A stretch of 64,000 nt of DNA from Lytechinus pictus (taxonomy: Eukaryota), in contig NC_087246.1 in the NCBI RefSeq assembly GCF_037042905.1, forward strand, positions 3,906,001 to 3,970,000, given 5' to 3'. A program made the translations under genes and the position numbers. Shown piece after piece: positions 39,101 to 64,000 of the stretch (positions are counted from its first letter, which is position 1; each line of letters opens with the position of its first letter). The notes under the pieces are model-generated. The model worked only from the letters and a program-made list of their open reading frames with translations, was not told the origin of the DNA and did no database searches.

Positions 39101-42100
39101 CATATTGTAATGAAATTATTATTTTTTAAATCAACATGGTATTTAACATTTTGGTTGCAGTGAATGGTGGTGCTAATCTTGTGCAATCATCTATTTCATT
39201 TATCTTCTGTAGGTAAAATGCAAAGATGATCAGACTATATCCATATCAACATCAAATGAGATATCTTCACTTTATATAATATCAAACGTAAAGATATTCT
39301 ATGGAACTCAAACTGGTACAGCAAAGGTAAACTAAGATAAAACTTTTTTTTTGTTGGTTATCTCACCTGTACAGCTGAAACATGACATACACACTACTTT
39401 AACAGAGATAGTAGGAGCAGCATTGTTAATATCAAAATCTTTAAGGCCACCGCACACCTTACCATGGGCATGTGACGCGATTTTGGAATCAAACGTAGTA
39501 AAATTTGATGGGAATATGGAGACATGGAAAATCTTACTCTGTAAAATTATGAATCATTACACCGATTCTTATATTCATGTCTGTGACTTTGTTACCATCC
39601 TTATGAGGATTGGCTACGATTTGAAACTAATTTGGAACTTGCTGCAATAAAAAGGCCTGCAATTATCCAAAATTGTCATAAAAATTCTTACCCTTAATTT
39701 TAACCTGAAATAAAAAGATACTTTGATTTCACATTTTCAAAAAATAAGCAAAATTTGATTTCTTCCTAAGTTGGATCATGGACCAGTCTAAGGTGAAGGT
39801 TTTGAAATAAATTATTTATACGTTATCTCGGAACATTTATGAGAATTTAACGTAATTGATCATTTGACATTGATTTTTGGTCATATAAGCAAGTCTGGGT
39901 TTGTTTTTGTTCAATAAAAAATGAAAACTAGGCAGTTGTTATCAACTCGATGATAATCAATATGTTTTGTCCTTGTTTGTAGTCAAATTTTGGATCAATT
40001 TTGGCCAAATTGACTTGGTATCCAGAATTGTGTGTTTTCAAGTTCTAAAGCAATAGACAATTATTTCATTTTTTTTTTTGGGGGGGGGAGAGGTACATGT
40101 ATAGTTATTTATCAGACCTTTAAGAAAAGCAAATTTTTTGGTTGTTTGTTGATAACTTGTTATTTCTAATGATATCGCAGACACAAAATACATATTTCAT
40201 TTTTTGTAGGACCTTGCAACTCAACTAGCTAAAGATATCCCTAGCCCAGTGAAGAAAGATGTGATTGATCTGAAGGAGTTTGACCCAGAGAAACATGTTT
40301 TATTAGATGTAAGTCAGTTTTTAAAACACTTGAATAATGACTGGATAGATTCAATGGATACATCATTTTCTCCTGTATACCAGACTTGATAACCAAGGCT
40401 GTTTAATTTGACACCTTAGAATGGAAATTGATATACATATATTTGATAATACATAGAATGCCTGAAGGAGAGTCCAACCCAAATTGATTTTTTTAAAGAA
40501 AAAAAAAAGAATTCAGAGAAACATAAAACTGAAAGTGTGATCATTATCATACAATCTACAAAGAATATTGTGAAAAATATGTATAAACCAATATTTCAAT
40601 GAGGATATTAAAATTAGTGCCCTTTGGATGTAGGGTAGGGACAGCTCCTTAATTTGCTCCAATACACAACATCACTACAATGTTATCTTTTTCAAATGCT
40701 TTACTTGGAGTGATTTTCTTATACTTTTGAGCCAGATTAATGGTGCTATGAAATGTAAATAATAATTTCTGTCTCTTTTCAGCAAGATGATGAGACATTA
40801 TGTGTGTACATCCTATCTACCTATACGGATGGTGAGCCTCCTGAGGGTGGGGCATGGTTCTATCGATGGCTTCATGAATCCGTCAATGATTTTAGAGTGC
40901 CAAGAACTTTACTCAAAGGACATAGATTCGCTGTCTTTGGACTTGGGAATTCACTTTATCAGGATCATTATAACACAGTGAGTAGACCTATAGCAATCCA
41001 TTTGTCCCATTAAGGTCATACGTTCAGTTAATCACTCGACCAAAACTGATTTTTGGGCTGAAAACCAAAAGTAAGTTGATTGGGGAGAAACATGACAAAA
41101 AACAGAGTAAATCACCTTTAATTCGAATCATTTTGCCAAAAGGTGATCAGATAATGCTGTCGCACATGGATATCTTCATTTCAATTTAGACCATATGAGA
41201 CTTGCTCTTTCATTCACATTTGTGCCCACCCTAAACTTCCTGAGCTCAGCCGACAATCATGATAATCCCACTACCCTTACCAGCAACAGTGAACTAAACA
41301 GAATACTGACAATACTAATTATTCTACTGAAGGAAAAGGATCAAGAAAATTTTACCTGTAATATGCCTCTGAGGCCAGATTTTAGAACTGCATTTTAAAT
41401 TTTGTCCCATACTTCGTCCATGCTGTCACCATCTCTTTCACTCGGCTCTGCTCTTTCGCTCAACTAATATTTCAGACAAAGTAAGAGGGACGAACATGGA
41501 GTCTCTCTGTCCGTGCCTACAGTGCAGAAGACGTTTGCATTGCATTTTTATTCCACAAGTTTTAGTTGACACTGCTCCTTATTTCTTCAAGAGTGTGTCC
41601 AAAATATCTTCATAAGTTGATATTGATTTTGCCTCATAATTCATTTTTATTGTAAGGGGTGTGATTTAGTATCCAGATATGTAATAAAGATTGTTATTTG
41701 GTTATAGGTCAGTAAAAATGTACATCAATGGCTGACAGACTTGAGTGCCAGGCCATTCCTCCCAAGAGGAGAAGGGGATGGCAATGTTGCAGCAGGCAAG
41801 CATGGTGGTAAGTTCCAGATAGGGACTGGTCCATAAAACTTTAAATTACAGCAATTTTGTATAACTTAATTGTAATAATTGTATATTGATTAATTAATGC
41901 ATGGTTTCAGACTATAGATTCAAAACTGCCATTTGGAATTAATAATAATAATATAGGGTATTTATATTGCGCACATATCCACCTTGTTAGGTGCTCAAGG
42001 CGCTCCTATATTACCCGGCTTTTAGGAGCCAATGTGTTCTGTATAATGTATCTATATGAAAATGAAATATATGATATGTTCTTTACTCGGATCTTAGAGA

Positions 42101-45100
42101 CTTACATATTAGTAAGAATTTATTGGTTTCTGGAGGAATCACTTTGTATGAAGATGTTAAAAGTGTGGTTCTATAATGATTTCATCCTAATTGTTTGAAT
42201 ATTGCATCTTAGCATTTTTTCACTAGCTGTGCTGTGATTGATAACCTGGTATGAGATTATCATGAAGGAAATGGATTTATTATGTTTTCATTCACATTCT
42301 TCAACTTTAAAGTAAAATATCTTAATCAATTATTTTATTTGCTCATTGATAGGTACTGAGGCGGATTTTGCTGCATGGAAATCTGATTTTCTTCAGGCTG
42401 TAGTAAAGGGCAATGGAACTGGTGATAATGCATGCAGTTGTAATCAAAATGGAACATGCCAGTCGATAAGCAAAGGTCAAATGTCATTGAAGCAGGTGAG
42501 GTTTCTAAATATGATGAAACTCATATTGCTTCAGTATCCCAGATTTTTTCCATTCTTAGTTTTTCACAAGCTTTGTATCTTCTATTTCACTGTATAAGTT
42601 ATTTCACTGTATAAGTTTATCTGTCATTTATGGGTGGAAACATACACAGCAAGAGTTTATGTTGCACTCAACTTTATGTTCATTTGCTAAATATATGTAG
42701 AACATACCACTTTATTTTGTTGGTTTTTGTGTGTTGATTACTAGATTTCATACATTTGGTATAACTTGTAAGAGAAAAGAATAATAAATAAGTACATAGT
42801 TAGATAGATAAATGATTAGATATATATACAGACCAGTAATATTTCTGTGCTCTGTCATATGTGTTCCTTTTATTTAGAACACTGTGGATCAAGGTCTTGT
42901 TAATGATGATGAGGAGAAGGCTGATGATGGTTTGGACAGTGACCAGGAAGATCCTGATGAGATGGATGTCATTGATGTTGAAGACCTGGGATCAGTCATG
43001 AACAAGATGAAGAATGCCAAGGTTTGTGTGTTCTTAGACTTTGATTCTTTTGATAGGGGATGTGGTAGAGAAAGATAGAGTTGGTCATTTGCTCTGGTTA
43101 ACATCCACTTTGCCTACCATCAGATGGTCTAATTCTCGGGTCATATAACACCGTCATGGCTAAACCCAGTTGGTCTAATATCAATTTGGTGTAATTACTG
43201 ATTTGTACAAATATCACTTTGGTTTATTACTCACTTGATAGAACTGTCATTCAGTTTACTTTATTTCCCACTTTGTTAAATGAAGATTTGGGTAATAAAC
43301 AGTTTGTCTTATGATATAGACAAGTTGGATAGACCAAGTAAAATGGGTATAACCCAACTGGTGATAAGGCAAGGTAGGAAATGGACTCAATTAGACCAAA
43401 CTGGGTCGTAGACTCACTGGTTGTAGACGAAGTAGTGTTAGACAATGAAGGATGATACCATACAGAAAATAGACATTGTGGGTGTAGACCAATTTACCTT
43501 TACCACATGAGAATGAGAACCCTCCTGCAGTGTTTTCTAAGTGAGATGCCGGATGATGCAAATAGGAGTTGTGACTGGGAAAAATATTTTAGCAAGTCAA
43601 GAAAGGAATCAAGTTTTGTCTACTGCGTCGTACTGATCTTTGATTAATTGCTGATAGGAATTGTTGAATGATTTATCCAACAAAGTATGTCTTATCTGAC
43701 AGTTGATGTAGTAACAGTCATACAACTGTGCTTCACTGGTGCAGGAAAGTTGTTAGATAACAAGTTATGATGTAAGGCTGTACCTGATATGAATTGTTAA
43801 AAATAATAGGTTTTACCTCAAAAGTGCTGGGGAATAAAAATTTAAATAGTTTCTATGGCTTACTAATGGGAAATATTGTTAAGTAACATTCATGATATGT
43901 GCTTGATTTAGTACCAGTTATGATGGTGCATGATTCTAGTCACAAATTATCAAGCATCTTTTATGACTGTGACTACTTAAAAATCATTTGGAATAGTTTT
44001 AGTGTCTAGATACTAAACATCTTTATGTAAAGGTAGTGAAATCTTAAATGAATAGTCAATTTGAATTTCATTGTTGTGTGTAGGCCATGAATGGAGTAAA
44101 ACAAAGCACTGAACCAAAGGAAATGGTCACGCCTACCATCAGGAAAAATCTTACAAAGCAAGGTAATTATTCATATAATTTAGTAGAAAGAGAGATAAAA
44201 TGTCATCAAAGTTTTGAAAAAGAATAAAAAATTGAAATGCATTTTTGTTAGTATGAGAGATTCTATGTTTATGTAAATGAAAAACTGAAAGTTTGTAAAG
44301 TTTCTAGTTCATTTGAAACTGCATTGCTCTTGAATTATCATGGCTTTTGAAGTTTTTTAAGTGTCATAAGAATGGAGAAAAATGGGGGTTGGAATTATAA
44401 AAAGGTTGATAATTTGATGGAATAGCCCAGAAGATTACAAGGTTTCATATTTGAAGTGAAGATATCGGTATGCAGATGGGGCTATTTTCAAATGTTTTAC
44501 CAACAAACATCTCATTGTTATTGTTTTACAGGTTATCGAATCATTGGTTCTCATTCAGGAGTGAAGTTATGTAGATGGACAAAGGTGAGCTATTAATCAT
44601 TATAACTCTTAACAGTTCTTACCAAGAATAGAATGTTGGTTTGCTTAGACTCAACATAAGGAGTCATTAGGCTCCCAAATACATTTTTTTTCTTGATATG
44701 CACAATGGATTACATTTTAAAAAATTGTCAAACAATTAACATGTCTTATCTGTTTTTTCATGTTGTAAATAAAATGAAAAAGTAATTTTTTTTAAATGAT
44801 AATTGATCAAGCCTATGAGTTTTACCCCCAACCCCCCCCCCCCACTAAACTGTAGTCTGAAGTTAAGTCTGATTGAAGGCTCCACAATTTCCACCCCAAA
44901 TATTCTAAACTGTAGTCTGTATATGATTGAAGGCTCCGTCCAAACAGCTTGACCTATGACCTGATATATTATACATAATCTTCTCGGTCATAAGGCTGAG
45001 GAGTGATGTTTTTGTTACTTTTTCTTTGGCAATCTTGTTTTTCAAATGCATAAAGTTACATAACAATGTAGGACTTATCCATACAATAAGAGTAGAATAG

Positions 45101-48100
45101 TCAAGAAAAATTGAGGGTTGAATAACATGATGAATGACTGGAAAATAAAGTGTCAAACTATTTTACAATATGTGTAAATAAAAACTATGATGTTTTACAG
45201 AGCATGCTTCGTGGTAGAGGTGGATGTTACAAGCATACATTCTATGGTATTGAGAGTCATCGATGCATGGAGTCCACACCCAGTCTAGCATGTGCTAATA
45301 AATGTGTCTTCTGTTGGAGGTGGGTAGTACTAGGTTAACTCACAACATGAGTAACAATTCACATAAAGCCTGTATAGCTGCAAATTCTGTAGCCTTTAAC
45401 CCTAATATGACTGGGGGCTGATTCACCATCCCGTCAACTTTTTTCGCTGTAAATCTGTAAGGTTAAAAGTTTGCACTGTGTTGTTTAATGACCAAGTTTG
45501 TGACCCCCGGATACATGTTTCCAAAATTACATAAAATTTTGTATGTGCATGTCAACAGAAAATTGCTATATCATGTACAAATCCAAAGCACCTTAGAATT
45601 TAAACAATGCCAAACTCTGGCTGTTCTCAGATGCGATTGTTATTTGCCTGTTTCTTTAAGACAGTTTTAACCACAAGCAAGTTGAAGCTTTAACCTAAGT
45701 AGTCATTATATATCAGTACAAGATTTGAGATATTTGTTGATCTTCAAGCTGTTATCCCTACTCAAAGAAATGAAGTAGTTTTGTTTTACACTTATTTAAC
45801 TTGGGTAGCTTTTCCCATCATAAGTCTGTAACAGCAGATTCATTCATTATTGCATGCTAATGACCTATTGAAACAAGACCAATCAAAACTAAAATTTATT
45901 TATGTGTGTGTGTGTGTGTATGTGGGGAGGGGGGTTGTATTGTAGGTAAGGTAGCAGAGGAGGGGGTGTGGGATAACGGTTTAGGTAGCATGGGGGGGCT
46001 TACCTACATGCCACTTTTTTCTTTTCAATTGCTTATGAAGCAAATGTCACCATCTAGTTCTAAATGCTCAATTCGTCAGGGAAAGTTCTCTGTAATAAGC
46101 CGAATAGACATTTGGGCTTCTAAAACTAAACTTAGAGTAACCCTTCCTTGTTGTACCTGAATTTTAGCCGAACTCAAGATACAAGCATTTTTGTATTGCA
46201 TCTATGAAAGCTTCAATATGTCTTTCACATTATAAAGCATACTCCTGATTATATGGTAAATAGCATATATCCATATTATTATTAAAGCTTAGGAAATGCT
46301 TTTTCAAAATCTGTAGAATATTACCTGACTTGTTGTGAGTTTTTAGCTGAGTGGTCAGAAATATTCAGAGACATCATTGAGCATGCAGGAATAGTCTGCA
46401 AGCATACATGTATTTGTCATAAGATTTTTATTTGTTATGTTTCTCCTTCCAGACACCATACAAACCCAGTTGGTACGGAGTGGAAATGGCAAATGGATGA
46501 TGCTGAAACCATCGTAGAGGGAGCCCTAAAGAACCACTATAACTTGATTAAACAATTCAAAGGTATGATTCTGGTACAAGATGAGATTTTGCTCAGTAAT
46601 TACCAAAATAATCCTGCCATCCTAACCGAAATTATTCTTAGCAATATTGATATACATGCCCATGTGTGCTTATTTATGTTTGTGTGATTTTGAGTAAAAT
46701 GGGTTTTATTGAAGTTTTCATTATTAATATTTGGTTCTCTTTACATATTTCAAACTATTTCAAAACTTAGCCCCCCCCCATAAAATTGTTGACTTGGCGT
46801 AATAGGCCAATGAAAATTTGGGTAGGTAGGGTGGATTTTTTTTTCTTTTGGTCGTTGTTGTCGCTTATATTTGCATATTATATGAAAGTAGCAATTTATA
46901 CACATACATACAGTGGCGTAGCTAGATCCTCAGACCTTGGGGATGATCTGATGAGGGGTAGAACACAATATCATATGTTCAAATAACTCTCCCCACATAT
47001 ATACACACTAATATATATGGACACAGAACGAGCCAGAAATTGTTGAAATCATGAAAGCAAAGAACATCCAGGGTTTTTCCGCATTGCAATATCGATGTTT
47101 ACGCGATCGATCGCGATCAATATCAGATTTTTTTTTTTAAAAGCAAAGGGTCGGCGATATATTTCGGGTCGGGCGGGTTACGCCAAGTAAACAATTTTTT
47201 TGGGGGGACCTTAGTTAGATCGTTGATGATTACAATTTTCTATTGCTATTTATTACTCACTGCAACTACTCCAGTTTGACTGTGACAATGATTATTCTTA
47301 TGACACATCCAGGAGTTCCAGGGGTAAAGCAAGAAAGAATGATTGAAGCGATGAGGGTGCAACATTGCGCCCTATCACTGGTAGGAGAACCCATCATGTA
47401 CCCTAAGATCAATCGTCTTGTAGAACTACTCCATAAGGAAAAGATCTCCACCTTCCTTGTTACAAATGCTCAGTTTCCTGATGCAATCAAGTAAGTCTTG
47501 GTGGTTTGTTACAAGAATCTATCATTGAAAAACCCATGTCATGTTTATACTGCTGGTAATATTGGCATAGGCTGAAAGGTAAAATCCACCCCAACAAGTC
47601 GATTTGAATAAATAGAGAAAAATTGAACAAACATAAATGTGACATTGTAATTGGAATCAAAAAGTTAATTAGAAAGTTATGACATTGAAGGTTTCTGTAT
47701 TTTTGCAAGACCATTTTTTTTAAGATTCTGACATACTATTCATTTTATATATTGCGATATTTTTACCTTTCTCTTGTAGGAATCTGCTACCAGTTACTCA
47801 GTTGTATGTGAGTGTTGATGCTAGTACAAAGGAAAGCTTGAAGAAAGTAGATCGCCCTCTATTTAGAGACTTCTGGCCAAGGTTCCTTGATAGCTTGAAA
47901 GCCCTTTCTGATAAGGTAGGGATAGAATCAGTGTACTGTATACGTAATTTACATTTTAATGTTAGTATATACCTGTACATGTACAATTTGGGATTTGAGT
48001 CAACGTGGGTAATAAAGTTTGGCAGATAATTTTGGTCTCAGGCTGAGAAATGTATTAATACAAATTATTTAAAAGAAAAGAATATAAAGTGGTGCTCAAA

Positions 48101-50701
48101 AGCTAGTGAACCCCACCAGAAAATGAATATATTTAAAGTGTTAAAATGTTCTGCCATGTTTAAAGTATTTAATTGTAAAGCAGGTGATAAACTATTCCAT
48201 TCAATAAAGTTGATTTCTCTGGGCTTGCTGAACATTGTAGCATTGTTGTCTCCATTCAATATTCAGCTTGATGGATTGTATTTACTGATAGGGTTCATTA
48301 ACTTTTGAGTACAACTGTATATACTCTGTAGCAACTATAGAATCTACAGAATTACAAGAGAACTTGTCCATAATTGGTACTGAATGATTGGCATCATTTC
48401 CTTTAGACCCATAAACAAATGTTAAGGCTCTCTTTAGCAACCTGATCCTTTCTTTTAACATAAACACTGCACTTAAAATATTCTTTTTTTTTATTGAAAC
48501 AGGGCCAGAGAACGGTATATCGTCTTACTCTAGTCAAGGCATGGAACGATGAGGAGATACAGTCCTATGCAAACCTTGTACAACTCGGCAAACCAGATTT
48601 CATTGAGGTCAAGGTATAGACCCTCAACTCTTTACATTTAGCCATCCCACCTGGTTATACACAATACTGATGATCTCTCCTTATGGTCTAGGAAATAGTC
48701 TGAATTGTTGTTTTTATTGTGGTTTGGAGTGAACTTTGCATGACCTTAGTAAACTTGAAAAATCAATGATCTAGCATTCTGATTTTTTTTTTGCAATGAG
48801 AATGATAATCTACATAGATTTGAACTGAGCAGATGTGAATGAAAATAATTAAGAATTTAAATTGGCCACAATGAATAGGTCACAAGCCGTGTATAAAGTT
48901 GTTAATGACTAACTAACAGCTTTTTGAAACACCCCCAGATCTCTAAGCCTTCCCTTGTTCTGTTGTACTGTGTGATACAAAGTTCTAGGAGAAACCAGTT
49001 GTGCCCAACCAGCTCATAAATCACAATAGGTCTGACGAAATGAGCTCCAATCTTTTAAACTAGACTTTAAAAATGATCTTACATGTAAACAAATTCTTGA
49101 ATACTAGTATTATTTTTTATTTTACTTCACAATTCACATTTTAATTGTAGGTTATTGATTTAAAAAGGCAGATTTTAGCTTTGAATGAGGTTTAGTCCTG
49201 GTCAAGAGTTCAATGAAATAAACCACCTCAAAGTGATTGTTAAAGGTTGTTTATAATCTCTTTAATTGTCTGATTGTGATGGTTGTGGATGGGAAATGTT
49301 GAACTTTTAATTTGTTTTATTTATCTCAGGGTGTAACCTACTGTGGTGAATCTAAAGCTAGCACACTGACCATGCAGAACATCCCTTGGCATGAGGAAGT
49401 TGTTCATTTTGTACAGAAACTCATGGACCTTCTACCAGAGTATGAGATAGCTAGTGAACATGAACATTCAAACTGTGTTCTGGCAGCTAATACAAAGGTA
49501 CAACTATTGTATGGTATTGTCCTGCATATAGATGTTACTAAGTTAACAACGATGAGAATTTGTAATACATGTGAAATCTGTTTTCTATCATAAAAAATGT
49601 TGTTACTTTTGATTTATGAACTTGACTTGCCCATGTAAGACTATTATTAGTCAATATTGATCTCATCATTGACTGAAATATTTGTTCTGTATATAGTTAT
49701 TTGTTGTGTTTTATGTTTGTGTAATCAGATGACTCTTGAATTTTCAAAAAAAAGGTGTAGATGTGTTATGTTCTAGTACAGTTGTCACTGTACTTTATCT
49801 CACACTCAAACTTTTGATTATGTTGCGGCAATTTAATCCTTTGATATATCTACATTTGCCACTTATCTGACACCACCAAGGTGTAATTGGTTTTGGTAGG
49901 AAGGAATTATCCAAATACTGGAAATACTTGTTTGCCTTGTGCGAGTCTGGGATAATATGGGAGTATTTAAAGCAGCTTGTTTGTTGTTCAAGTTTGCTGT
50001 ATATGTTATAGCCAATAAGGCAACCTACCAATAGTCAGAGCTGTTTCTTTCCTTTAGTAATCTTGCAAGTAGCTTATCATTGCTAATTACATCATAGAAG
50101 AAACAATGAGGAATCTAGGAAAACCACTGATAGTGCCTTTCACAGTGAGATTCCTGTTAAAAAAGACACTACACACACTTTTTTTGTAAGGTGCTTTTTC
50201 TTTAATAGCAGAAGCAGTTGTAGTTTTCATGTTTACTATATTTTTTATTTCCATGCAGTTCAAGAAGAAACAGAGGAATCTAGGAAAGCCACTGATAAGT
50301 GCCTTTACTGTCAGATTCCTGTTAAAAGACACTGCACACACTTTTGATGAGGTGCTTTTTCTTTTCTAGCAAAAGCAGTTGTAGTCGTATTACTGTATTT
50401 TTAATTCATCTTTTGTATATTTGATTGCCTCTGGTATTTTCATTAGATTCCTTTATACTTTATTTTTGTTTCCATGTAGTTCAAGAAGGATAGTGAATGG
50501 TGGACTTGGATCGATTACCCACAATTCCATGCGCTGATGGCTGAATATGATGCGAGCGAGGGAAAGAAAACATTCACGGCAGAGGACTATATGGCAAAGA
50601 CCCCTTCATGGGCTGTGTACGGGTGCAAAGAGCAAGGTTTTGATCCGCAGGAGACTCGATTTTACAGGAAGGGAAAGAAGAAGGATATGGGTGGATGCTG
50701 A
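33167..50701 (+). CDS. TYW1: tRNA wybutosine-synthesizing protein 1 (flavodoxin + radical-SAM 4-demethylwyosine synthase), 17 coding exons, 721 aa
   Basis: Exons: 33167-33233, 38022-38149, 39213-39326, 40210-40308, 40783-40977, 41708-41807, 42353-42495, 42878-43021, 44084-44162, 44532-44584, 45201-45319, 46453-46562, 47313-47490, 47780-47915, 48503-48613, 49330-49497, 50480-50701. 2166 nt, phases consistent. Motifs: [10 protein letters not shown] and [11 protein letters not shown] (flavodoxin), [30 protein letters not shown] (CxxxCxxC), [28 protein letters not shown]. Exon 1 is the least certain. Confidence 0.95.
35606..36278. mobile_element. Foldback DNA element with ~200-bp near-perfect TIRs (TAGCCTGG...CCAGGCTA)
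   Basis: Arm ~35610-35805 is the reverse complement of ~36075-36264; 8-bp flanks ATTCACCT (35598-35605) / GTTCACCT (36279-36286). Confidence 0.82.
36313..36390 (-). pseudogene. tRNA-Cys(GCA)-like degenerate sequence / tRNA-derived SINE head
   Basis: Minus strand: A-box-like TAGCATAGCGGG, anticodon arm TTGA-CTGCAGA-TAAA resembling tRNA-Cys, B-box GTTCGAGTC; the acceptor stem does not pair. Confidence 0.4.
37346..37542. repeat. Foldback inverted repeat (~90-bp arms)
   Basis: AAAACTTGCCGATGTTTACATGGCCATCTTGTT...AGCTACTAGACGCATAT / ATATGCGTCTCGTAGCT...AACAAGATGGCCATGTAAACATCGGCAAGTTTT. Confidence 0.8.
41941..42021 (-). mobile_element. 5'-truncated 3' tail of a LINE/SINE with an (ATT)n tail
   Basis: Minus strand reads ...GGAGCGCCTTGAGCACCTAACAAGGTGGATATGTGCGCAATATAAATACCCTATATTATTATTATT: a stem-loop followed by a trinucleotide tail, as in L2/CR1-mobilised elements. 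Confidence 0.5.
50095..50490 (+). repeat. Local ~165-bp tandem duplication in TYW1 intron 16 that includes a copy of the terminal-exon acceptor
   Basis: GAGGAATCTAGGAAA(A/G)CCACTGATA..GTGCCTTT..AGATTCCTGTTAAAA occurs twice; TTTCCATG(C/T)AG|TTCAAGAAG at 50258/50259 and 50479/50480. Confidence 0.8.
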
Positions 50702-55534: not shown

Positions 55535-56079
55535 TAGAGTTAATTCTGCTCCCATGGATCATGATTTCGTCCCCCCAAAATACCATTGTTCATTTCAATT
55601 TTATTATACTGTATAGGATAAATGAAGAAAAAAAAACATAATTGGATTGGCAAGACGTTATTCGATATGAATTAAAAGAAAGGGGGTGTAAGCAATGGAG
55701 GAGGAGGGGGGGGGTCGAGATATAAAGAAGAGAGAGAGATATAATATAGATTGTTAGAGAGGGTGAATTGTGAAAGGGGAATCAAATAAATGATTAGTGT
55801 AAGTTTACCCGCCAACCTGAGACCATTGGAGAAGTAGGTGGTGTTAGTAGAAAGAATGAGGGGGAATGCGAAAAAGATCTTCATGCGTGCTGCTGTGACA
55901 TATTTTGCCGACTTCGACTACTCGTTCTGTGCATTTGCTTCGCGGGCTCTGTGTTATTTTAAACCGCAAGCATGTCATTACCACGCGGTTCCCCCGGCAT
56001 CACATTCATGTTCGTGATTCGTTAGATTGAGCGGGATATTTATGCCTTTGTCGATCATGGGGATTCCCCAACCTCCATC

Positions 56080-59000
56080 ATGGCGTCGGATACAACAATG
56101 TCGGATACAACAATGTACTCCACTGTTTTCACTGACTTGAATATGCGGTTCGAATGGTTAATTGGTGAGTCAGATTTTTATACAATAAATTAGAAATATT
56201 GAATTCTGATGATATCGCGCTGGTTTTCATTAGCTCTGTATATCATTTTAAGTAGAATAAACTATAGGCCTATTATATATTACTCTAGCTGTATTTCTGA
56301 AAAACCACACTGGCAAGTCACGTTGCTTATTATATGGGCATACGCAGGGCATTGAATATGTTTGAGCTTTTATGTTCGTGATGTGCGATGATCTACATTC
56401 GTATATTATGTCTCCCATAATGCCATGAATGTATAATAATTATGTAGGAAATATGAAAAGCAGACTATTCGTTTTTTAAATATATTTTGACAGGGATAAG
56501 GGAGAGAGAGTGCGACTAAGAGAGAGAGAGAGAAGGCGAATAACGGCGATTCTTCTGTTCAATCATCTAATTCGACTAATTACCGTGGCGGATCCAGTAT
56601 TTCTTCAGGGGGTCTAAATAAGTCGAACATTTTTCATAAAAAATCAGACTAAAAAGAGGTCAAAACCAAGGTCACCACACTGTTAGTTTCTCTCTCAACC
56701 CCCCCCCCCACTCCAATCGACCCCCCGTTGAAAGGGGCTCCAATAAATTTTGTTTCCCCCTATTTTGTAATAGTTTTTTCCTCCCCTGGATCCACCACTG
56801 CACTATTCGAGTGTCCAGAATTAGACATTCTGTTTCTCTTCCCACTTGAACGTCAAGTCCACCCTAGAAAAATGCATGATGTGAATAAATAGAGATAAAT
56901 AAAATTAGCAAATGAGCATAATGCTGAAAATTTCATCCAAAAAAAATTCAATACATCGGATGTAAAATAAGAAAGTTATGGAATTTTAAAGTTTCGATTA
57001 TTTTTCACAAAACAGTAATATGGACTACTCAGTGACATGCAAATTAGACAGTTGATGATGTCCCTCCCTCACTTTTTCTTTTATTTTTTATTGTTTGAAT
57101 TAGACAATATTTCATTTGGTTTTCCAGATTTGACAATAAGGACCAACGTAACTGAACTGATATAATACTAAACAATGCTAATTCCACATGTTCAGGGAGG
57201 AATTAATCGCTGTTTCACTTGACAATGTGGAAAAAATAAGAATATTCCATGTTGCATTTAATAATATACAAGAGAAATAGTGAGTGGATGATGTCATCAG
57301 TCTCCTCATTCATTTGCATACCGACAGCGTGTGTGTATAATTGTTTTGTGAAATTAAGCGAAACTTAAAAATGTCATAACTTTCTCATTCTAAATCCGAT
57401 TTTGGTGAAATTTTCAGTGTTATGTTTGTTGGGTTTTCTTCTTTTTATCCAAATAAAGTTTTTGTTGGGGTGGACTTGTCCTTTAATCAGAAGACAAAAC
57501 AGACTATTGCCTTGACTGGCAATGCAATTACCATGATGATGGTTATGGGTAAAAGCAAATGCTATGTTCATTATCCTGCTAGTATTAAACTTACATAATA
57601 TTTGATTCGGTTATGTAAATACCACAACCTATATCAGCCTTGATAAAAAGTGGGATCTGAATTTAACTTTTGATATGATTTAAAATGTCTGTGTCACGCC
57701 TGTGTCATGTTATTCTTGATTATTTATTGAATTCTTTGACAATTATCTTTGGAAATTTTTCTCTTATCGCTAGTACATTTCATAAAAAATCATGTCTTCA
57801 CAGATTTTGTTAGAAATTTGGGTCTGTATTTTCGAAATAATTATATATATATTATCTTTGCATTCGTTTTTTCAGATCTCTTCAATGAAACGTTGCATAA
57901 TTATGAACGACCGGTTAAAAGGGGTTTCTTCTGTTCGGATACTTCTATCCGATATCCATATTTTTCGGATGATACTATCAGCATATTCACTCTGTTGTGC
58001 ATCATAACCGTGCCACTGTTATTTGTAAGTTCAAATGTTTGTATATATTGACCCCAAACAGGGACGGACATTTTAAGGACTATATTTTAGGAATCCATTA
58101 AGAGTATACATGTACATACTCTTACTCTGTGGTTGCCACGCAGCCAAGCTAGCTTATAGTGGCAACCCCTGCAACCTTCTAAAAATCGATATGTTTTAAT
58201 AGAAAATGCAATTTTGTTCAATGTTTTGCTTGTCAGTTATATGTATATTATTATTGTATTTTCTTTGTTAATGTGTTTATGAAAAAGTATTGCAGAAACC
58301 AATAGATGAAATGAAACACATATATCTCACCATAGTCATCTAATTCGAGTGCCGAGGCGCCTGCTGATTTTGTTAGAATTGCATCTAAACACATGAGACA
58401 CTTGTAGTCATTGTAATCAAGATTAACATACGCATCTCACCAATCAAATATTGCGAGCGCGAAGCGCGAGCTGAAAATTTAGGAAATTCAGACCTGAAGA
58501 GGGACATTTTAAGGCTTGTTTGTAGGAATTCACAAAGACCATACGCATTTTACTAACCAAATGATGCGAGCGCGAAGCGCCAGCTGAAATTTTTGTATAT
58601 ATTGACCCTAAACAGGGATATTTTAAGGACTATTTTTTAAGGAATCCATTAAGAGTACACATATCTCACCATAGTCATCTAATGCGAGTGCCAAGCGCAT
58701 GCTGATTTTGTTAGAATTGCATCTAAACACATGAAGTACTTTTTGTAGTCATTGTAATTATGATTTAACATATGCATCTCACTAATCAAATATTGCGAGT
58801 GCGAAGCGCGAGCTAAAATTTAGGAAATTCAGACCTGAAGAGGGGCATTCTAACTCTTGTTTGTAGGAATTCACGAAGACCATACGTATTTCACTAACCA
58901 AATGATGCGAGCGCGAAGCGCAAGCTGAAAATTTTTGATATTCAGATCAGAAAAAGGGACATTTTAAGGACTGATTTTAGGAATTCATGAAGAGCAGACA

Positions 59001-62000
59001 TATCTCACCAATCCACTAATGCGAACGTTAGCACGGACAAGAAATGTTTTATATTAAGACCTTAATATGGGGCAATCACTTTAAGCAGTTATGAACTGAA
59101 AAGAAGCATATGTCACTACATAAAACAATACAATAATTCGAAGAGCGAGAAAATATATATTTTGTGTATATTTACTTGAAAACAGGAGGTTTTAGTACAA
59201 CAGGATTATATATCTCGTTAAACAGACAATGCGAGCACCAGGAACACTGAAGACATAGGCCCTGATCAAATTATGTTTCATAAAGTTATGAAAAAAATGT
59301 TTTTATGTAATATAACATAACATGATTATGATATAATATAACTACGTTTCTCTTCCCGGCTTTATCCCTCTTTTTCTCCTTTTCACCGTTTTTATTTATT
59401 TATTTTTTTGGCCAGCCAATGATAGTGATGGTAGTGGTGGTAATGATGATGATGATGATGATAATAATATTAATTGATGATAATGATGGTGATGATGATA
59501 ATTATGATTGATAACAATGATGGTGGTTGTGGTGGAGATGATGGTGATGACGAGAAGGAGGATGACGAAGATGCATGATGGCGATGATTGTGTCGGTATT
59601 TTTTGTGTTGGTTATTATGATGATTGTGATATTATCATCATAATTATCATTATGCCACATTTGAATGATTATTATTTAAAATATTTAGCCAACCCTAGAC
59701 CCGTTTAATTATCGATTGGCCATTTCCTTTCTTTTCATTCATTTGAAAAATTTCGTCTTTTCAGATGATCTGGCACCAGAGTATAAGTTGGATGCTGGCA
59801 TATCGAAGAAGTGACGTCGATTCTATCCTCCAACGACCACACCCTATGGGTGTGGTGGGTGGGGCACTTCTCACAACTCTCCTCACTGTCTGTATGAAGC
59901 TCGGCATAGGGAGATTAGCGCCCAATTTTTATGAAGGTTGCATGCCGAAGTCAGATTGTTACAACAGTGGCTACTGGAGTGAAGTTCTTAGTCACATGTA
60001 TATAACTGATTTTACATGTTTCCATCCAGAGAGGTTAAGGGAAGTAAGGTACGATTTATATCATCTTACTTTCTACATTGCTTTGTTTGGTTTTTATTTT
60101 TTCTTCGAGAAATTTATTTTGTCTACTATTTAAAGCCATTTTAGAATAAGTTCGAGGCCTTGAAACTGATACTTTTTTTTTATACAAAATGAATTCTACA
60201 CTTGATTAATGCTCAACCTTAATGAAAAGATGTTATTAATTGAGAGATAAAAAGGCTTAATTTTCTCAAAAAATCTGTAAAGAAATGAGTGATACAAGCG
60301 TCAAAAGTATAAATTACTTCTTCATAAACATGATGGGCAATTATTGTGGAAATTTATATATTTTGTACTTTCGGTATTCAAAAAATACTCTTATCTTCAC
60401 GTGAATTTGAAGCAAAATGCCGGTGAATAGCCTCGTATCCTGACCTTAGAGTGTACGAAGGTATTTTTGTTTTTGCGTATTTTTACGACGTAACTATAAA
60501 ACCCAAACTCTATATACCTTTATGGCAAAACTACACATTGTTACTGATAATTGTGCACTAATGTATTTCATTTTTACAGTCGATCATTTCCCTGTGTGTA
60601 CACATCATTGTCATCATTTTCTTGGTTCTATTTCTTGGTAAGTTTTTTTTAATCAATAAATCTTCTTGATCTTGATTAGATATTCACTGCATTCTAAAAA
60701 ACACTATTCTATTTACATTCTCATCCCCTCTCAACTTAAGATTGACGCCGAGCCATCACAATTTCATTACATAATTAATTATTGTCTTAAAAACACTGAC
60801 GGTTCATAATTCGGATGAGATGATTTCTATTTATTATTAATGACATATTGTTTTCAGTTCTCTTATGTTTATTAAAAGAAATCAGAAGTTTAAAGGCATT
60901 AATAATAAAAGCACAAACGACGTTGCATTGAATAGATGGACGGTTTTTAAGGTATTTTATTTATTTACTTATTTATTCATTTATTTACTTCTGTTACTCC
61001 TTTCATTCTACCAAATTCGCTAATATAACAAAATTTGATCAGGCCAGATTATGATCTTTACTTCTTCTGAACTACTTTAGATATACTTGGTATACAACTC
61101 CCCAACGCCTAGTCTCCGAAGAACATTCGCTGTCATTACCTGTCTTGCAATCCCCGCCTGTGTCGCATTCACTCGTCTTCATGACAACAGGAGTCATTCA
61201 GGTGACGTAATTGCAGGATGCATTCTGGGTATTTCGATCGCAGTTATCTTGACAGTCGGTAGAAAGGCAAAGTCTGATTGGGTGAGATATATTATGGTTT
61301 TAGAATGTTTTTGACGGTCATGTTAAAGGATGTCATTGTGGAAGTATATTCCTTGTGAATATGGTTGTGGCTATTTTATTGACTGTGGTTGGTTTTGGTT
61401 GCCGCTGTGGTGATTGTTGTAGTTTAATGGTTGTGGTTAGGATTGTTGTTTGGTGGTGAATGAGGTTCTGAATGCCGTTTGCGGTTGTGGTTTTGGTTGC
61501 GTTTGAAGATTTGTTGGTTACTGTGGTTTTTGTTTTGACTTAAAATTGTTGCATTGGTCTTGGTTGTACGTGGTTGTGAATGTGGTTTGTTTGCGGTTGT
61601 GGTTTTGATTTGGTGCAGTTGTGGTTGTTAGTTGTTACCGTGATTTTAGTTTTGATTAGTATTGTAGTATTAGTTGTGGTTTTGGTTATAAATATCCCTG
61701 TGTTTGTGGTTTTTGTTGCAAAACGAAATTTGCACCCCTTCTTCTGCTTTCAACAGCTGATTTTCCAAACTTTAGTTCCACCTGGCCCCAAGATATGCAC
61801 CCCATACCACTTTAGTTCCACCTCCCCAGGATGTGCACCTCCCCATGCTCAAACCAGCATATGCCCAGCAGATTGCTCTTCATATTTTATCCTTCTATTG
61901 GTATTCTTATTCTTTTCATATTTCTAATCACATTCCCAATCGTATTTGTTATTCTACTCTGATGCCCATTTCCGATCAGATATATTCCTTTTTCCGATTC

Positions 62001-63445
62001 ATAATTCTATTGATGTTCTCTTTCGCATTCCCATAATTATTTATATCCCCGTGCTCACAGAAGAATTCCTGGCTCTTCCTCTTCATATTAATATTACAAT
62101 GATTACTATTCGATTCATCTTAGTATTTCCCCTCCTTTTCATAACTTTTCATTTCCCTTTCATCTAAATATTAATTACTTTGTCATTCTTATTTTTATTC
62201 AACACAACACCCCTCTTTCTTTTCCAATTCTTTCCCGGTTTTTTCCCTTCCACTTCCTCTTAATGTTGTTATTTCCCTCTTTTTTTTTCATTTTCTATTC
62301 ATTTTCCTGATGCTTCTATTTCCCCTTTCTCTGAATTTTCGTCTTGTTCTCTTCCCCCCTTCCATTTCCCCTTCTTCTCGTTCTCATTCATCTCGCTCTT
62401 CCCGCTTGACTCTAAACTTGGAAGAAGAATAAAGAAGATGAGAAAATGGAGGAAGACAACGACGACGTCAAAGAAGAGGAAGAAGAAGAAGAAGAACTAG
62501 AAAAAGAAGAGGAAGAAGAGGAGGAGGAGGAGGAGGAAGAAGAAGAGATCTAACATAAATCTAATTAAGATGTGGTGTACATGATATTAGAATGATGAAT
62601 CAAATTTAAAAAAAATGATATAATTATGAAAATAATAAGGTCCTTTTCCATCATTTTTTTTCAGACTGAAGATGATAAAGACGTAGACTTTGAAATGCTA
62701 TCTATGAGGGAATCGGAGGAAGGTATAAGCCTTAGACAGAAATTTCGTTTTTTAATGAGTTTTCCTTTTTTTTCTTTTACTATTGTGGAGGAGGCTAGTC
62801 GAGCCAGACACATTTTCTGCAAAACACTATAATGCAGAATAGAGACTGAAGATTTCTGTATAATGCGGCTTAATGCTCTATTTGTCTTGTTTCCAAAGTA
62901 GACATGATTATAATTGTCAAATGCACATTTAAAAAAATGGTCAAATGAGCTAATCTCTTTGTGAATATAATTGTTGGTTGATAAATTGGTTAATATCAGA
63001 TACTAACCGACACATTGGTTATTTTGACCGATACTTTTTACATGTTTACGAAGGTATTGACTTAGTTGGTGGAAAGGAGAGAGAGCGAGTAGTAACAGAA
63101 GCAGCAGCAGCAGTAGTAGTAGTATTACCATAATTTTATTTCCTATTTATACAACAGCGTCTAAAGAGAAGAACCTCAGACCGACGGTTAGAGTTTGCTC
63201 ATCGGCCTTGACGTCTAACATTCAAGGTTTCATTGACGAGCTCAAACACCGCTTAAACGATTATGTCGTAGGCATTGATCACGTCATACTTCCATACAGC
63301 GATCTCGATTCATTTAAACCGACTGGCTGGAATAAGACTGATGTCGTCATATTGTGTCATTCCATCAATAATCGAAGGCTATCGATCACTGACGTGACAG
63401 ACGCCCTTTACAATGAATTCCTTAAGATGGTTACGAAACATTGCG
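56080..63445 (+). CDS. PAP2/phospholipid-phosphatase (PLPP/PLPPR)-like membrane protein with degenerate catalytic motifs, fused to a C-terminal uncharacterised alpha/beta domain; 3'-incomplete
   Basis: Exons: 56080-56164, 57876-58024, 59765-60048, 60580-60637, 61081-61281, 62665-62722, 63158-63445; phases 1,0,2,0,0,1,1; no stop. PLPP signatures RGFFCSDTSIRYPY, KLGIGRLAPNFYEGC, RSFPCVY, TRLHDNRSHSGDVIAG. The last exon ends at a donor, so the gene continues beyond 64000. Confidence 0.8.
56583..56800. mobile_element. Old MITE with C(A/C)GTGGCGGATCCAG termini
   Basis: CCGTGGCGGATCCAG ... CTGGATCCACCACTG; no clean TSD. Confidence 0.55.
56850..57482. mobile_element. Kolobok-type MITE in intron 1 of the PLPP-like gene
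   Basis: Degenerate left end (ttga-ACGTCAAGTCCACCC), intact right end GGTGGACTTGTCCT-TTAA (57483-57486); body collinear with the outer 13012 copy. Confidence 0.82.
58039..59260. repeat. Satellite-like tandem array (~113-bp units, ~342-bp higher-order repeat) with GCGAGCGCGAAGCGC cores
   Basis: Cores at ~58457, 58570, 58688, 58799, 58911; block ~58320-58590 is repeated at ~58660-58935. Confidence 0.8.
59420..59670. repeat. (GAT)n / (GGT)n microsatellite low-complexity tract
   Basis: Directly visible. Confidence 0.85.
62420..62547. repeat. (GAA)n/(GAG)n purine tract, preceded by a pyrimidine-rich tract (~62200-62400) and GT-rich low complexity (~61360-61720)
   Basis: Directly visible. Confidence 0.85.
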
Positions 63446-63489
63446 GTAATTATGTTTTGGTATTTCATAAGCTTTACAATCATCCATTA

Positions 63490-64000
63490 TAGTGGAGCGG
63501 TTATGTGACAAAAAATGGCCAAGATGCTCGGATCTGGCAGAAAGTGTGAAATTTGGCATACAGGGGTATTTTTGGGCGCTGATTTCAAAAATTGCCGGCC
63601 CCAAGCGATTTGACCATCGGGTCGGCCGCCATTTTGAAATCCAAAATGGCCGCCAAAAAAAATCATTAAATGTCATTTTCTTGAGTTTTACACGGCATGT
63701 GACACTGAAATCTGGCATATATGGGTATTTTGGGGCACTGATTTAAAATATTGCCGGCCCCCACCAATTTGACCATTTGGCCGGCGGCAAAATGGCTGCC
63801 ATCTTGAAATCCAAGATGGCCGCCATGATATATTATTGCAATCATTTTCTCGAGTTTTATATGAACTGCGGTACTGAAATTTGGCACATAGGCTTAATTT
63901 TGGGTGCTGATTAAAAAAATTGCCGGCCCCAAGCGATTTGACCATTGGGTCGGCCGCCATTTTGAAATCCAAGATGGCCGCCATGAAAAATCATTAAATG
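63490..64000. repeat. Tandem ~160-170-bp repeat with GGCCGCCATTTTG..CAAAATGGCCGCC palindromic core (probable Helentron-type core repeats), runs off the window
   Basis: GAAAT(T/C)TGGCA(T/C)A at 63548, 63707, 63876; each unit contains GCCGGCCCC and the inverted CCATTTTG / CAA(A/G)ATGG motif. Confidence 0.75.

What the first reader, a model, noticed from the sequence alone, without database searches (positions are those of the whole stretch)
61081..63445. Candidate new receptor: dead lipid phosphatase fused to a cytoplasmic TIR-like alpha/beta domain
Seen: after the last TM helix the frame continues by phase-compatible splicing (61281->62665, 62722->63158) through an acidic linker into PTVRVCSS-ALTSNIQGFIDELKHRL-NDYVVGIDHVILPY...TDVVILCHS-INNRRLSITDVTDALYNEFLKMVTKHCG. 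This alternates beta-alpha-beta...beta-alpha, with a hydrophobic strand ending in Ser and a following helix containing a Glu (LYNEF), as in TIR/SEFIR/flavodoxin-like folds, where the alphaC Glu is the NADase catalytic residue. I recall the ITDVTD(A/S)LY motif from uncharacterised, expanded protein families in echinoderms and amphibians, but cannot verify that here. I know of no described PLPP or PLPPR with such a domain. Inference: a sensor-effector in which a pseudo-phosphatase binds an extracellular lipid phosphate (LPA, S1P or lipid A-like) and signals through a TIR-like module, plausibly in innate immunity.
Basis: partly seen in the sequence, partly recalled or inferred. Interest (0 to 1): 0.82.

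Follow-up and report, generated by a model that had tools for sequence, protein, structure and literature searches.

The report
Dead lipid phosphatase fused to unknown domain
A sea urchin gene really does join an inactive membrane lipid-phosphatase relative to a cytoplasmic domain from a large, undescribed protein family found mainly in sea urchins and frogs, but nothing tested here shows that this domain is a TIR domain or that the protein is an immune receptor.

Summary
The window is from Lytechinus pictus. One spliced RNA contig joins the PAP2 exons to exons 6 and 7, and on to an eighth exon 3 kb beyond the window, all at GT..AG sites. The product is RefSeq XP_063963662.1 (447 aa).

The same fusion occurs in L. 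variegatus, S. purpuratus and two Diadema species.

The PAP2 part is dead. Four residues that are each essential in human PLPP1 (R127, S169, H171, H223) are replaced by A, C, Y and S in all five urchin orthologs. LPP helix TM1 is also missing.

The C-terminal 160 aa form a confident flavodoxin-like alpha/beta fold (pLDDT 90.8). They belong to a family with no Pfam, NCBIfam or PADLOC model. L. pictus has about 40 two-exon copies, frogs have hundreds, and the symbiont Endozoicomonas has one.

TIR membership is not supported:
- There is no HMM or profile match.
- The structural score ties with CheY-like receivers and GTPases.
- The proposed catalytic Glu is not conserved.

The conserved residues are instead Ser/Thr, His-Ser/Thr, Thr, Tyr, Asp and Gln.

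My best reading is a PLPPR-like pseudo-phosphatase that holds a ligand-binding or catalytic module of unknown function at the cytosolic face of a membrane.

The parts
56080..56163 (+). Exon 1 of the annotated model: start codon and residues 1-28. It has no hydrophobic helix.
   Evidence: tblastn of P0001 on the window, 100% identity; sequence read.
57875..58024 (+). Exon 2, residues 29-78: the RGFFCSDTSIRYPY loop typical of LPPs and the first TM helix, which corresponds to LPP TM2.
   Evidence: The alignment to PLPP1 starts at PLPP1 residue 30, after its TM1.
59765..60048 (+). Exon 3: the helix homologous to TM3 and the extracellular loop with the degenerate C1 motif KLGIGRLAPNF at 59894-59920. 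The Arg of KX6RP is Ala130.
   Evidence: RNA contig piece and GT..AG joint; alignment to PLPP1 shows R127 replaced by A; conserved in five urchin orthologs.
60580..60637 (+). Exon 4: the degenerate C2 motif SFPCVY at 60581-60598, in place of SFYSGH. PLPP1 S169 is Cys, G170 is Val and H171 is Tyr.
   Evidence: H171A and S169A abolish PLPP1 activity (PMC13745504).
61081..61281 (+). Exon 5: the helices homologous to TM5 and TM6 and the degenerate C3 motif TRLHDNRSHSGD at 61171-61206. PLPP1 H223 is Ser230 (61192-61194).
   Evidence: The same position is the H223A mutation in PDB chain 9l0u_A.
62665..62722 (+). Exon 6: a 19-residue acidic linker, phase 0 in and phase 1 out.
63158..63445 (+). Exon 7: the first 96 residues of the cytoplasmic alpha/beta domain (strands 1-3 and the conserved loop CHSINNRRLSITDVTDALY). 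His346 is at 63358-63360. The non-conserved Glu365 is at 63415-63417. The domain is completed by exon 8 outside the window (L002:3493-3713, G000:C2:3972493-3972713, stop TAA).
55798..55959 (+). An upstream open stretch that encodes a TM1-like hydrophobic segment (CCDIFCRLRLLVLCICFAGSVLF). It has no in-frame ATG and is closed by TAA. I read it as a relic or 5' UTR. The L. variegatus model reads through it.
   Evidence: I recognised the likeness to LPP TM1 from my own knowledge; no tool tested it.

Best explanation
This is a genuine echinoid gene, conserved across sea urchins.

N-terminal part. It is a divergent member of the PAP2/lipid phosphate phosphatase family that cannot work as a phosphatase. 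It has five membrane helices homologous to LPP TM2-TM6.

C-terminal part. After the last helix comes an acidic linker and one copy of a roughly 160-residue flavodoxin-fold domain, on the side that homology with LPPs says is cytoplasmic. This domain comes from a large uncharacterised family that exists as a two-exon cassette. In paralogs the same domain is tail-anchored to membranes or repeated 2-6 times in one chain.

Most likely mechanism (inferred, not shown). The pseudo-phosphatase acts as a membrane anchor, and possibly as a lipid-binding platform, in the way vertebrate PLPPR/PRG proteins do. The output is carried by the cytosolic domain. Its function sits in a pocket at the C-terminal edge of the sheet, formed by Ser/Thr293 (end of strand 1), His346-Ser/Thr347 (end of strand 3), the ordered loop NRRxxITDVxDALY, Asp385 (after strand 4) and Gln408. 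The pocket binds a small, probably phosphorylated, ligand or catalyses a hydrolytic or transfer reaction.

Shown: the splicing, the conservation, the loss of catalytic residues, the fold class and the family's spread. Inferred: the topology, the anchoring role and the pocket.
For: Fusion transcript: one contig crosses five introns with GT..AG ends.

Same architecture elsewhere: L. variegatus P0120, S. purpuratus P0121 and Diadema P0018/P0111, with 37-90% identity.

PAP2 membership: Pfam PAP2 scores 48.3 bits against a cut-off of 27.2. Solved PLPP1, PLPP2 and PLPP3 match at E 5e-15 to 9e-14.

Dead site: PLPP1 R127, S169, H171 and H223 are replaced by A, C, Y and S, invariant in the five orthologs. 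Each single Ala mutant of PLPP1 drops to control level, and the PLPP1 termini are cytoplasmic (PMC13745504).

Domain fold: AF2 pLDDT 90.8 and pTM 0.87, with five strands and helices in flavodoxin order. 118 of 122 residues of a CheY-like protein superpose at 2.8 A.

No curated family matches.

Family size: 108 representative clusters, at least 322 short members, and about 40 two-exon copies in this genome with the intron at the same domain position.

Membrane context in paralogs: tail-anchor helices in P0013, P0015 and P0022.

Near-invariant residues: H71, T81, V83, Y88, G100, D110 and Q133, with S/T at positions 18 and 72. All are kept in the PAP2-fused orthologs.

Selection: exons are 94-96% identical between the two Lytechinus species against 80-88% for introns. 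dN/dS is about 0.45-0.55, from few changes.

PLPPR precedent: inactive LPP relatives whose cytoplasmic tail is needed for function (PMC9520309).
Against: No function of the domain has been measured anywhere, and no paper was found.

The conserved polar residues could be a purely structural hydrogen-bond network that holds the long loop after strand 3.

I had no model coordinates, so the clustering of these residues is inferred from strand order.

The missing TM1 makes the topology less certain, because the N-terminus would have to be translocated without a signal peptide.

Two RNA-seq runs sampled at about 6% showed no reads on the exons, so expression is restricted or low.

dN/dS near 0.5 shows only moderate constraint.
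Confidence: 0.55

Rival explanations
1. The domain is a TIR-like module, possibly an NADase with a helix-C Glu. The protein is an innate immune receptor that senses an extracellular lipid phosphate and signals by TIR-type assembly.
Against: No TIR-type HMM hits any of 90 members, even at E 10. hhalign against 30 TIRs from the same genome gives 0.3% probability. CheY-like receivers and GTPases score higher than TIR. E365 is Glu in only 28 of 90 members, and no Glu is invariant. The Death hits are below Pfam's cut-off (19.5 and 21.8 against 22.6 bits). Four of the six residues that mutagenesis showed PLPP1 needs, which include the phosphate-binding ones, are lost.
Confidence: 0.1
2. The domain is an enzyme, a hydrolase or transferase that uses a Ser/Thr293-His346-Asp385 constellation on neighbouring strands. 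It acts on a membrane-proximal substrate, and the PAP2 part is only an anchor.
For: His346 (88 of 90 members) and Asp385 (88 of 90) sit at the ends of strands 3 and 4, and Ser/Thr293 (86 of 90) sits at the end of strand 1. This is the usual active-site edge of doubly wound folds. SGNH/GDSL esterases appear among the weak structural hits. All tandem repeats keep these residues.
Against: Ser and Thr interchange freely at position 293 (S46, T40), which is unusual for a nucleophile. Tandem arrays of 2-6 copies are more typical of binding modules. No hydrolase family matches by sequence. The geometry was not checked, because I had no coordinates.
Confidence: 0.2
3. The domain is a degenerate Ras-like or GIMAP-like GTPase fold that has lost its P-loop. 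It would be a pseudo-GTPase scaffold.
Confidence: 0.08
4. The domain is a true flavodoxin-type FMN-binding redox module.
For: The nearest named ESM Atlas shapes are Flavodoxin_5/HemG clusters (TM 0.59-0.69, 144-147 residues aligned). One S. purpuratus member is auto-named 'Flavodoxin domain-containing protein'.
Against: No flavodoxin HMM matches any of 90 members. The loop after strand 1 lacks the Gly of the T/S-x-T-G-x-T phosphate loop (the motif is from established knowledge). Comparison with the flavodoxin exon of the neighbouring TYW1 gene gives 1.4% probability.
Confidence: 0.04
5. The fusion is an annotation or assembly artefact, and exon 7 belongs to a separate transcript.
For: Gene predictors often merge neighbours. 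The family's other roughly 40 copies are independent genes.
Against: One RNA contig spans exons 3-8 with canonical splice sites in two independent studies (X1 and X15). The same architecture appears in five species of three genera. In L. variegatus the intron between exons 7 and 8 is only about 190 bp.
Confidence: 0.02

Closest known systems
PLPP1-3 (lipid phosphate phosphatases, PAP2 superfamily PF01569)
   Same: It matches the Pfam PAP2 model above threshold. It aligns over about 215 residues with solved PLPP1, PLPP2 and PLPP3, including the RGFFCxDxSIxYPY loop and the C1-C3 motif framework.
   Different: R127, S169, H171 and H223 (PLPP1 numbering) are replaced, and each is essential in PLPP1. 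TM1, part of the PLPP1 tetramer core, is absent from all urchin models. A folded domain of about 170 residues follows TM6.
PLPPR1-5 / PRG proteins (vertebrate phospholipid phosphatase-related proteins)
   Same: They are LPP relatives with substituted catalytic residues and no LPA phosphatase activity, and their cytoplasmic C-terminal extension is needed for function (PMC9520309). This is the best analogy for how the urchin protein may work.
   Different: PLPPR tails are described as unstructured, and PLPPRs keep six helices. Here the tail is a compact alpha/beta domain from an independent, expanded family. Common descent with PLPPRs was not tested. The urchin PAP2 part is very divergent: the word-based search found only one non-orthologous relative at E below 1e-5.
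TIR domains
   Same: The same broad fold class, a three-layer alpha/beta sandwich with strand order 2-1-3-4-5. Both are found in multi-copy, lineage-expanded families.
   Different: No sequence or profile similarity. The structural score does not stand out. There is no conserved Glu.
CheY-like receiver and flavodoxin (Flavodoxin_5/HemG) domains
   Different: The end of strand 3 carries His, not the phospho-acceptor Asp. There is no FMN phosphate loop and no HMM match.

Membership tests
PAP2 / LPP superfamily | Match to Pfam PF01569 above the gathering score, and homology to solved PLPPs | tested here: met
   48.3 bits against a cut-off of 27.2. PLPP1, PLPP2 and PLPP3 match at E 5e-15 to 9e-14.
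PAP2 / LPP superfamily (active enzyme) | C1 motif KX6RP with the phosphate-binding Arg | tested here: not met
   The motif reads KLGIGRLAP. Ala130 aligns with PLPP1 R127. The position is A or S in all urchin orthologs.
PAP2 / LPP superfamily (active enzyme) | C2 motif PSGH with the catalytic His | tested here: not met
   SFPCVY aligns with SFYSGH, so H171 is Tyr180 and S169 is Cys178.
PAP2 / LPP superfamily (active enzyme) | C3 motif SRX5HX3D with His | tested here: not met
   The motif reads TRLHDNRSHSGD. Ser230 aligns with H223, the residue mutated in PDB 9l0u.
PAP2 / LPP superfamily | Six transmembrane helices with both termini cytoplasmic | tested here: inconclusive
   The alignment starts after PLPP1 TM1. 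The hydropathy scan finds the helices homologous to TM2, TM3, TM5 and TM6, and a weaker TM4. The topology was not measured.
PLPPR / PRG | Inactive catalytic motifs plus a functional cytoplasmic C-terminal extension | tested here: met
   This shows likeness in how the protein works, not shared descent.
PLPPR / PRG | Membership of the vertebrate PLPPR clade in a phylogeny | not tested
   No tree was built. The PAP2 part is too divergent for the word-based search.
TIR | Match to a TIR-type sequence model (TIR, TIR_2, SEFIR, TIR-like DUFs; ThsB models in PADLOC) | tested here: not met
   None of 90 members hits any such model at E up to 10.
TIR | Profile-profile similarity to bona fide TIR domains | tested here: not met
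   hhalign of A1 against 30 L. pictus TIRs gives probability 0.3% and E 0.19.
TIR | Structural match that stands above other flavodoxin-like folds | tested here: not met
TIR (NADase subclass) | Conserved catalytic Glu | tested here: not met
   At position E365 the family has K32, E28, R9 and D8 of 90. No invariant Glu occurs anywhere in the domain.
TIR (NADase subclass) | NAD+ cleavage | not testable with these tools
   This needs a biochemical assay.
Flavodoxin | Flavodoxin HMM match and an FMN phosphate-binding loop after strand 1 | tested here: not met
   No flavodoxin model is hit. The loop consensus C-S-S-[SA]-x-E-S-N has no Gly.
CheY-like receiver | Acidic pocket with the phospho-acceptor Asp at the end of strand 3 | tested here: not met
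   The end of strand 3 is His-Ser/Thr, and the end of strand 1 is Ser/Thr-Ser.
Ras-like / AIG1 GTPase | P-loop GxxxxGK[ST] after strand 1 | tested here: not met
   It is absent from the alignment, and there is no GTPase HMM hit.

The most novel reading that the evidence does not exclude
The roughly 160-residue CHS...ITDV...Y...HDF...QP domain is a new signalling or effector module of animal innate immunity, a functional counterpart of TIR or Death domains. It has expanded in sea urchins and frogs and was copied by the symbiont Endozoicomonas to interfere with its host. On this reading, the PAP2 fusion is a membrane receptor whose pseudo-phosphatase pocket senses a lipid phosphate and switches the domain on.
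Probability: 0.15. Interest if true: 0.85.

Novelty: new variant of a known kind. Interest (0 to 1): 0.58.

Why it matters
Inactive relatives of lipid phosphate phosphatases are known so far only with disordered tails, as in the vertebrate PLPPR/PRG proteins. This one carries a compact, conserved domain.

The domain itself belongs to a family that no curated library describes and that no paper I could find mentions. It has hundreds of members: about 40 copies in one urchin genome and large arrays in all frogs sampled.

Defining what this domain binds or catalyses would annotate all of these proteins at once. It might also explain why a marine symbiont holds a copy.

L. pictus is a genetically tractable urchin, so the gene can be knocked out.

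Tried and rejected
Searches and tests that gave nothing:
- Homodimer prediction of the domain gave no verdict (score 0.00). It counts neither for nor against self-association.
- Profile search of PDB sequences with the family alignment gave only chance-level hits.
- Pfam, NCBIfam and PADLOC scans of the domain and of full-length relatives found nothing consistent.
- hhalign against urchin TIRs and against the flavodoxin exon of the neighbouring TYW1 gene were both negative. So the Foldseek top hit by E-value (the TYW1 flavodoxin domain 6puq, TM only 0.38) and the adjacency to TYW1 look like coincidence.
- A search for AIG1 in this genome, to build a GTPase profile, found no match.
With the Endozoicomonas protein it found only that one genome.
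- Paper searches by gene name and by locus ids returned nothing.
- The feature search of the ESM Atlas gave only unnamed clusters below 0.9.
- The search of earlier findings returned only this same finding.

Ideas rejected:
- The upstream TM1-like stretch is not a coding first exon in L. pictus. It has no in-frame ATG and is closed by a stop.
- The kinesin fusions in Xenopus were not examined further and may be merged gene models.
Full report
**Where and what.** The window is G000:C2:3906001-3970000 of an 812-Mb assembly. The proteins it encodes are RefSeq models of Lytechinus pictus. The finding covers the last three in-window exons of a plus-strand gene.

**Check of the observation.**
- Downstream DNA holds a phase-matched eighth exon at L002:3493-3713, 3 kb past the window's end. 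It completes the domain and ends in TAA.
- Laying public runs on 59740-63600 showed one 1634-nt contig (X1, depth 34), and matching contigs in a second study (X15). They join 59765-60048, 60580-60637, 61081-61281, 62665-62722 and 63158-63445.
- Each skipped piece has GT..AG ends. A loose end after 63445 reads the first bases of exon 8.
- Exon 7 is single-copy in the genome, so this is a spliced mRNA and not a retrocopy.
- An exhaustive HMMER search with exon 7 returned a 447-aa protein identical to this gene, XP_063963662.1, named 'phospholipid phosphatase homolog 1.2 homolog'.
- The refutation condition 'exon 7 belongs to a separate transcript' is therefore not met.

**Conservation of the fusion.**
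- Proteins with the same PAP2-plus-domain layout exist in L. variegatus (P0120), S. purpuratus (P0121), Diadema antillarum and D. setosum (P0018, P0111).
- The Diadema proteins have an extra hydrophobic insert between the two parts.
- Between the two Lytechinus species, exons 5, 7 and 8 are 94-96% identical while introns are 80-88% identical. The intron between exons 7 and 8 is only about 190 bp in L. variegatus.
- Nei-Gojobori dN/dS is 0.45 for exon 5 and 0.55 for the domain. These come from few changes, so the constraint is real but moderate.

**The PAP2 part.**
- Pfam PAP2 matches above threshold. The solved human PLPP1, PLPP2 and PLPP3 align at E 5e-15 to 9e-14.
- In that alignment, K120, E162, R217 and D227 of PLPP1 are kept.
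- R127 is Ala130, S169 is Cys178, G170 is Val179, H171 is Tyr180 and H223 is Ser230.
- The H223 position is the one replaced by Ala in PDB chain 9l0u_A.
- The PLPP1 structure paper reports that K120A, R127A, S169A, H171A, R217A and H223A each reduce activity to about control level. It also reports that both termini are cytoplasmic (PMC13745504).
- The same substitutions are invariant in all five urchin orthologs. This is an old, maintained pseudo-enzyme, not a recent decay.
- The alignment begins after PLPP1 TM1. None of the urchin models except the read-through L. variegatus one has a TM1.
- In L. pictus a TM1-like stretch lies upstream at 55798-55959, without an in-frame ATG and closed by a stop.
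- TM1 is part of the PLPP1 tetramer core. I therefore do not assume that this protein forms tetramers.

**The C-terminal domain.**
- Domain mapping on the hits shows an autonomous unit of about 150-160 residues, present one to six times per protein.
- An alignment of 90 copies (A1) gave an AlphaFold2 model with pLDDT 90.8 and pTM 0.87. The order of elements is strand, helix, strand, strand, helix, strand, long kinked helix, strand, helix.
- Foldseek against the PDB found only weak hits (one at E below 1e-3): flavodoxins, Rho GTPases, receivers and a SIGIRR TIR domain.
- In the ESM Atlas the nearest named shapes are Flavodoxin_5/HemG and response regulators.
- All these families share the doubly wound 2-1-3-4-5 sheet.
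- No Pfam, NCBIfam or PADLOC model matches the domain, even when all 90 members are scanned at E up to 10.
- hhalign against 30 TIR domains that I extracted from this same genome gives 0.3% probability.

**Conserved residues.**
- Gln408 is invariant.
- His346, Thr356, Val358, Tyr363, Leu367, Gly375, Val381 and Asp385 are conserved in at least 90% of members.
- Positions 293 and 347 are always Ser or Thr.
- In the model, 293 ends strand 1, 346-347 end strand 3 and 385 follows strand 4.
- Residues 348-363 form a long, confidently modelled loop.
- These are the positions where doubly wound folds bind ligands or catalyse. That they cluster in space is my inference from the strand order, since I had no coordinates.
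No acidic residue at a helix start is invariant.

**The family.**
- The exhaustive search found 108 representative clusters.
- A profile search limited to 95-301 aa found 322 proteins. All are called 'uncharacterized', and they come from sea urchins and from every anuran genus sampled.
- AlphaFold DB clusters add elephant shark, amphioxus, cnidarians, a limpet and others.
- L. pictus has about 40 copies, in clusters on contigs C10, C3, C18 and C9. Each is split by an intron at the same domain position, about 96.
- This suggests the PAP2 gene acquired a two-exon cassette.
- Some paralogs end in a hydrophobic tail anchor.
- Two S. purpuratus proteins have sub-threshold Death-domain hits, and two Xenopus models have kinesin motors. 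Ten other long relatives have no second domain.
- One bacterium, Endozoicomonas elysicola, encodes a 259-aa copy very like the urchin type. I suspect transfer from an animal host; this is inferred.

**Reading.**
- The closest working analogy is the vertebrate PLPPR/PRG group. These are LPP relatives without phosphatase activity whose cytoplasmic tail carries the function (PMC9520309).
- Here the tail is a folded module of unknown activity, which is also seen tethered to membranes by other means in its paralogs.
- I therefore favour 'membrane anchor or platform plus cytosolic ligand-binding or catalytic domain'.
- I rate the TIR/NADase receptor model at about one in ten.
- The gene model is already in RefSeq. 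The domain, its family and the pseudo-enzyme status appear to be undescribed.

Noticed in passing
window 40200-50700, + strand: The upstream neighbour looks like TYW1 (tRNA wybutosine synthesis). One exon (40759-41010) matches Flavodoxin_1 (E 2e-8). Other exons carry a radical-SAM-like CxxxCxxC and a typical C-terminal end; those are my reading of the ORF list only. The domain under study shows no relation to this flavodoxin exon (probability 1.4%).
   Followed up: partly
window 63480-64000 and L002:450-3400 (intron between exons 7 and 8), both strands: Several copies, in both orientations, of a repeat whose frames read ...MAAILDFKMAA.../...GRHFEIQNGR... fill the 3-kb intron. They are very abundant in the RNA runs (depth 170-380) and absent from the L. 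variegatus intron, which is about 190 bp. There is no Pfam hit.
   Followed up: partly
window 61675-61932 (intron 5): A short element has very high depth in all four runs (250-590 in contigs), with many variant joints and loose ends. It is a dispersed, transcribed repeat, possibly a SINE.
   Followed up: no
window 55798-55959: A hydrophobic stretch that resembles LPP TM1 lies upstream of the annotated start. It has no ATG and is closed by a stop in L. pictus, but it is read through in the L. variegatus RefSeq model (548 aa). It may be a relic of a lost first helix.
   Followed up: partly
L035:8001-8780 (Endozoicomonas elysicola NZ_JOJP01000001.1): A lone bacterial gene encodes the same domain, with the CHSIFNRRFAITDVPDALY motif and an amphipathic, hydrophobic C-terminus. 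This is the only prokaryotic genome found with it, so it is probably a eukaryote-like protein acquired from a host.
   Followed up: partly
L003:4733-7072, - strand (about 14 kb past the window's end): A 780-aa intron-less ORF with many hydrophobic segments and no Pfam match lies next to the gene on the opposite strand.
   Followed up: no
L004:329-4084 and L003:594-1994, 8916-9878, - strand: A full-length (1252-aa) ORF and truncated ORFs of a LINE-type retrotransposon lie here. I saw the endonuclease and reverse-transcriptase motifs by eye only.
   Followed up: no
window 62420-62550: A GAA/GAG-rich low-complexity tract in intron 5 encodes a poly-Glu ORF. The RNA contig does not include it.
   Followed up: no
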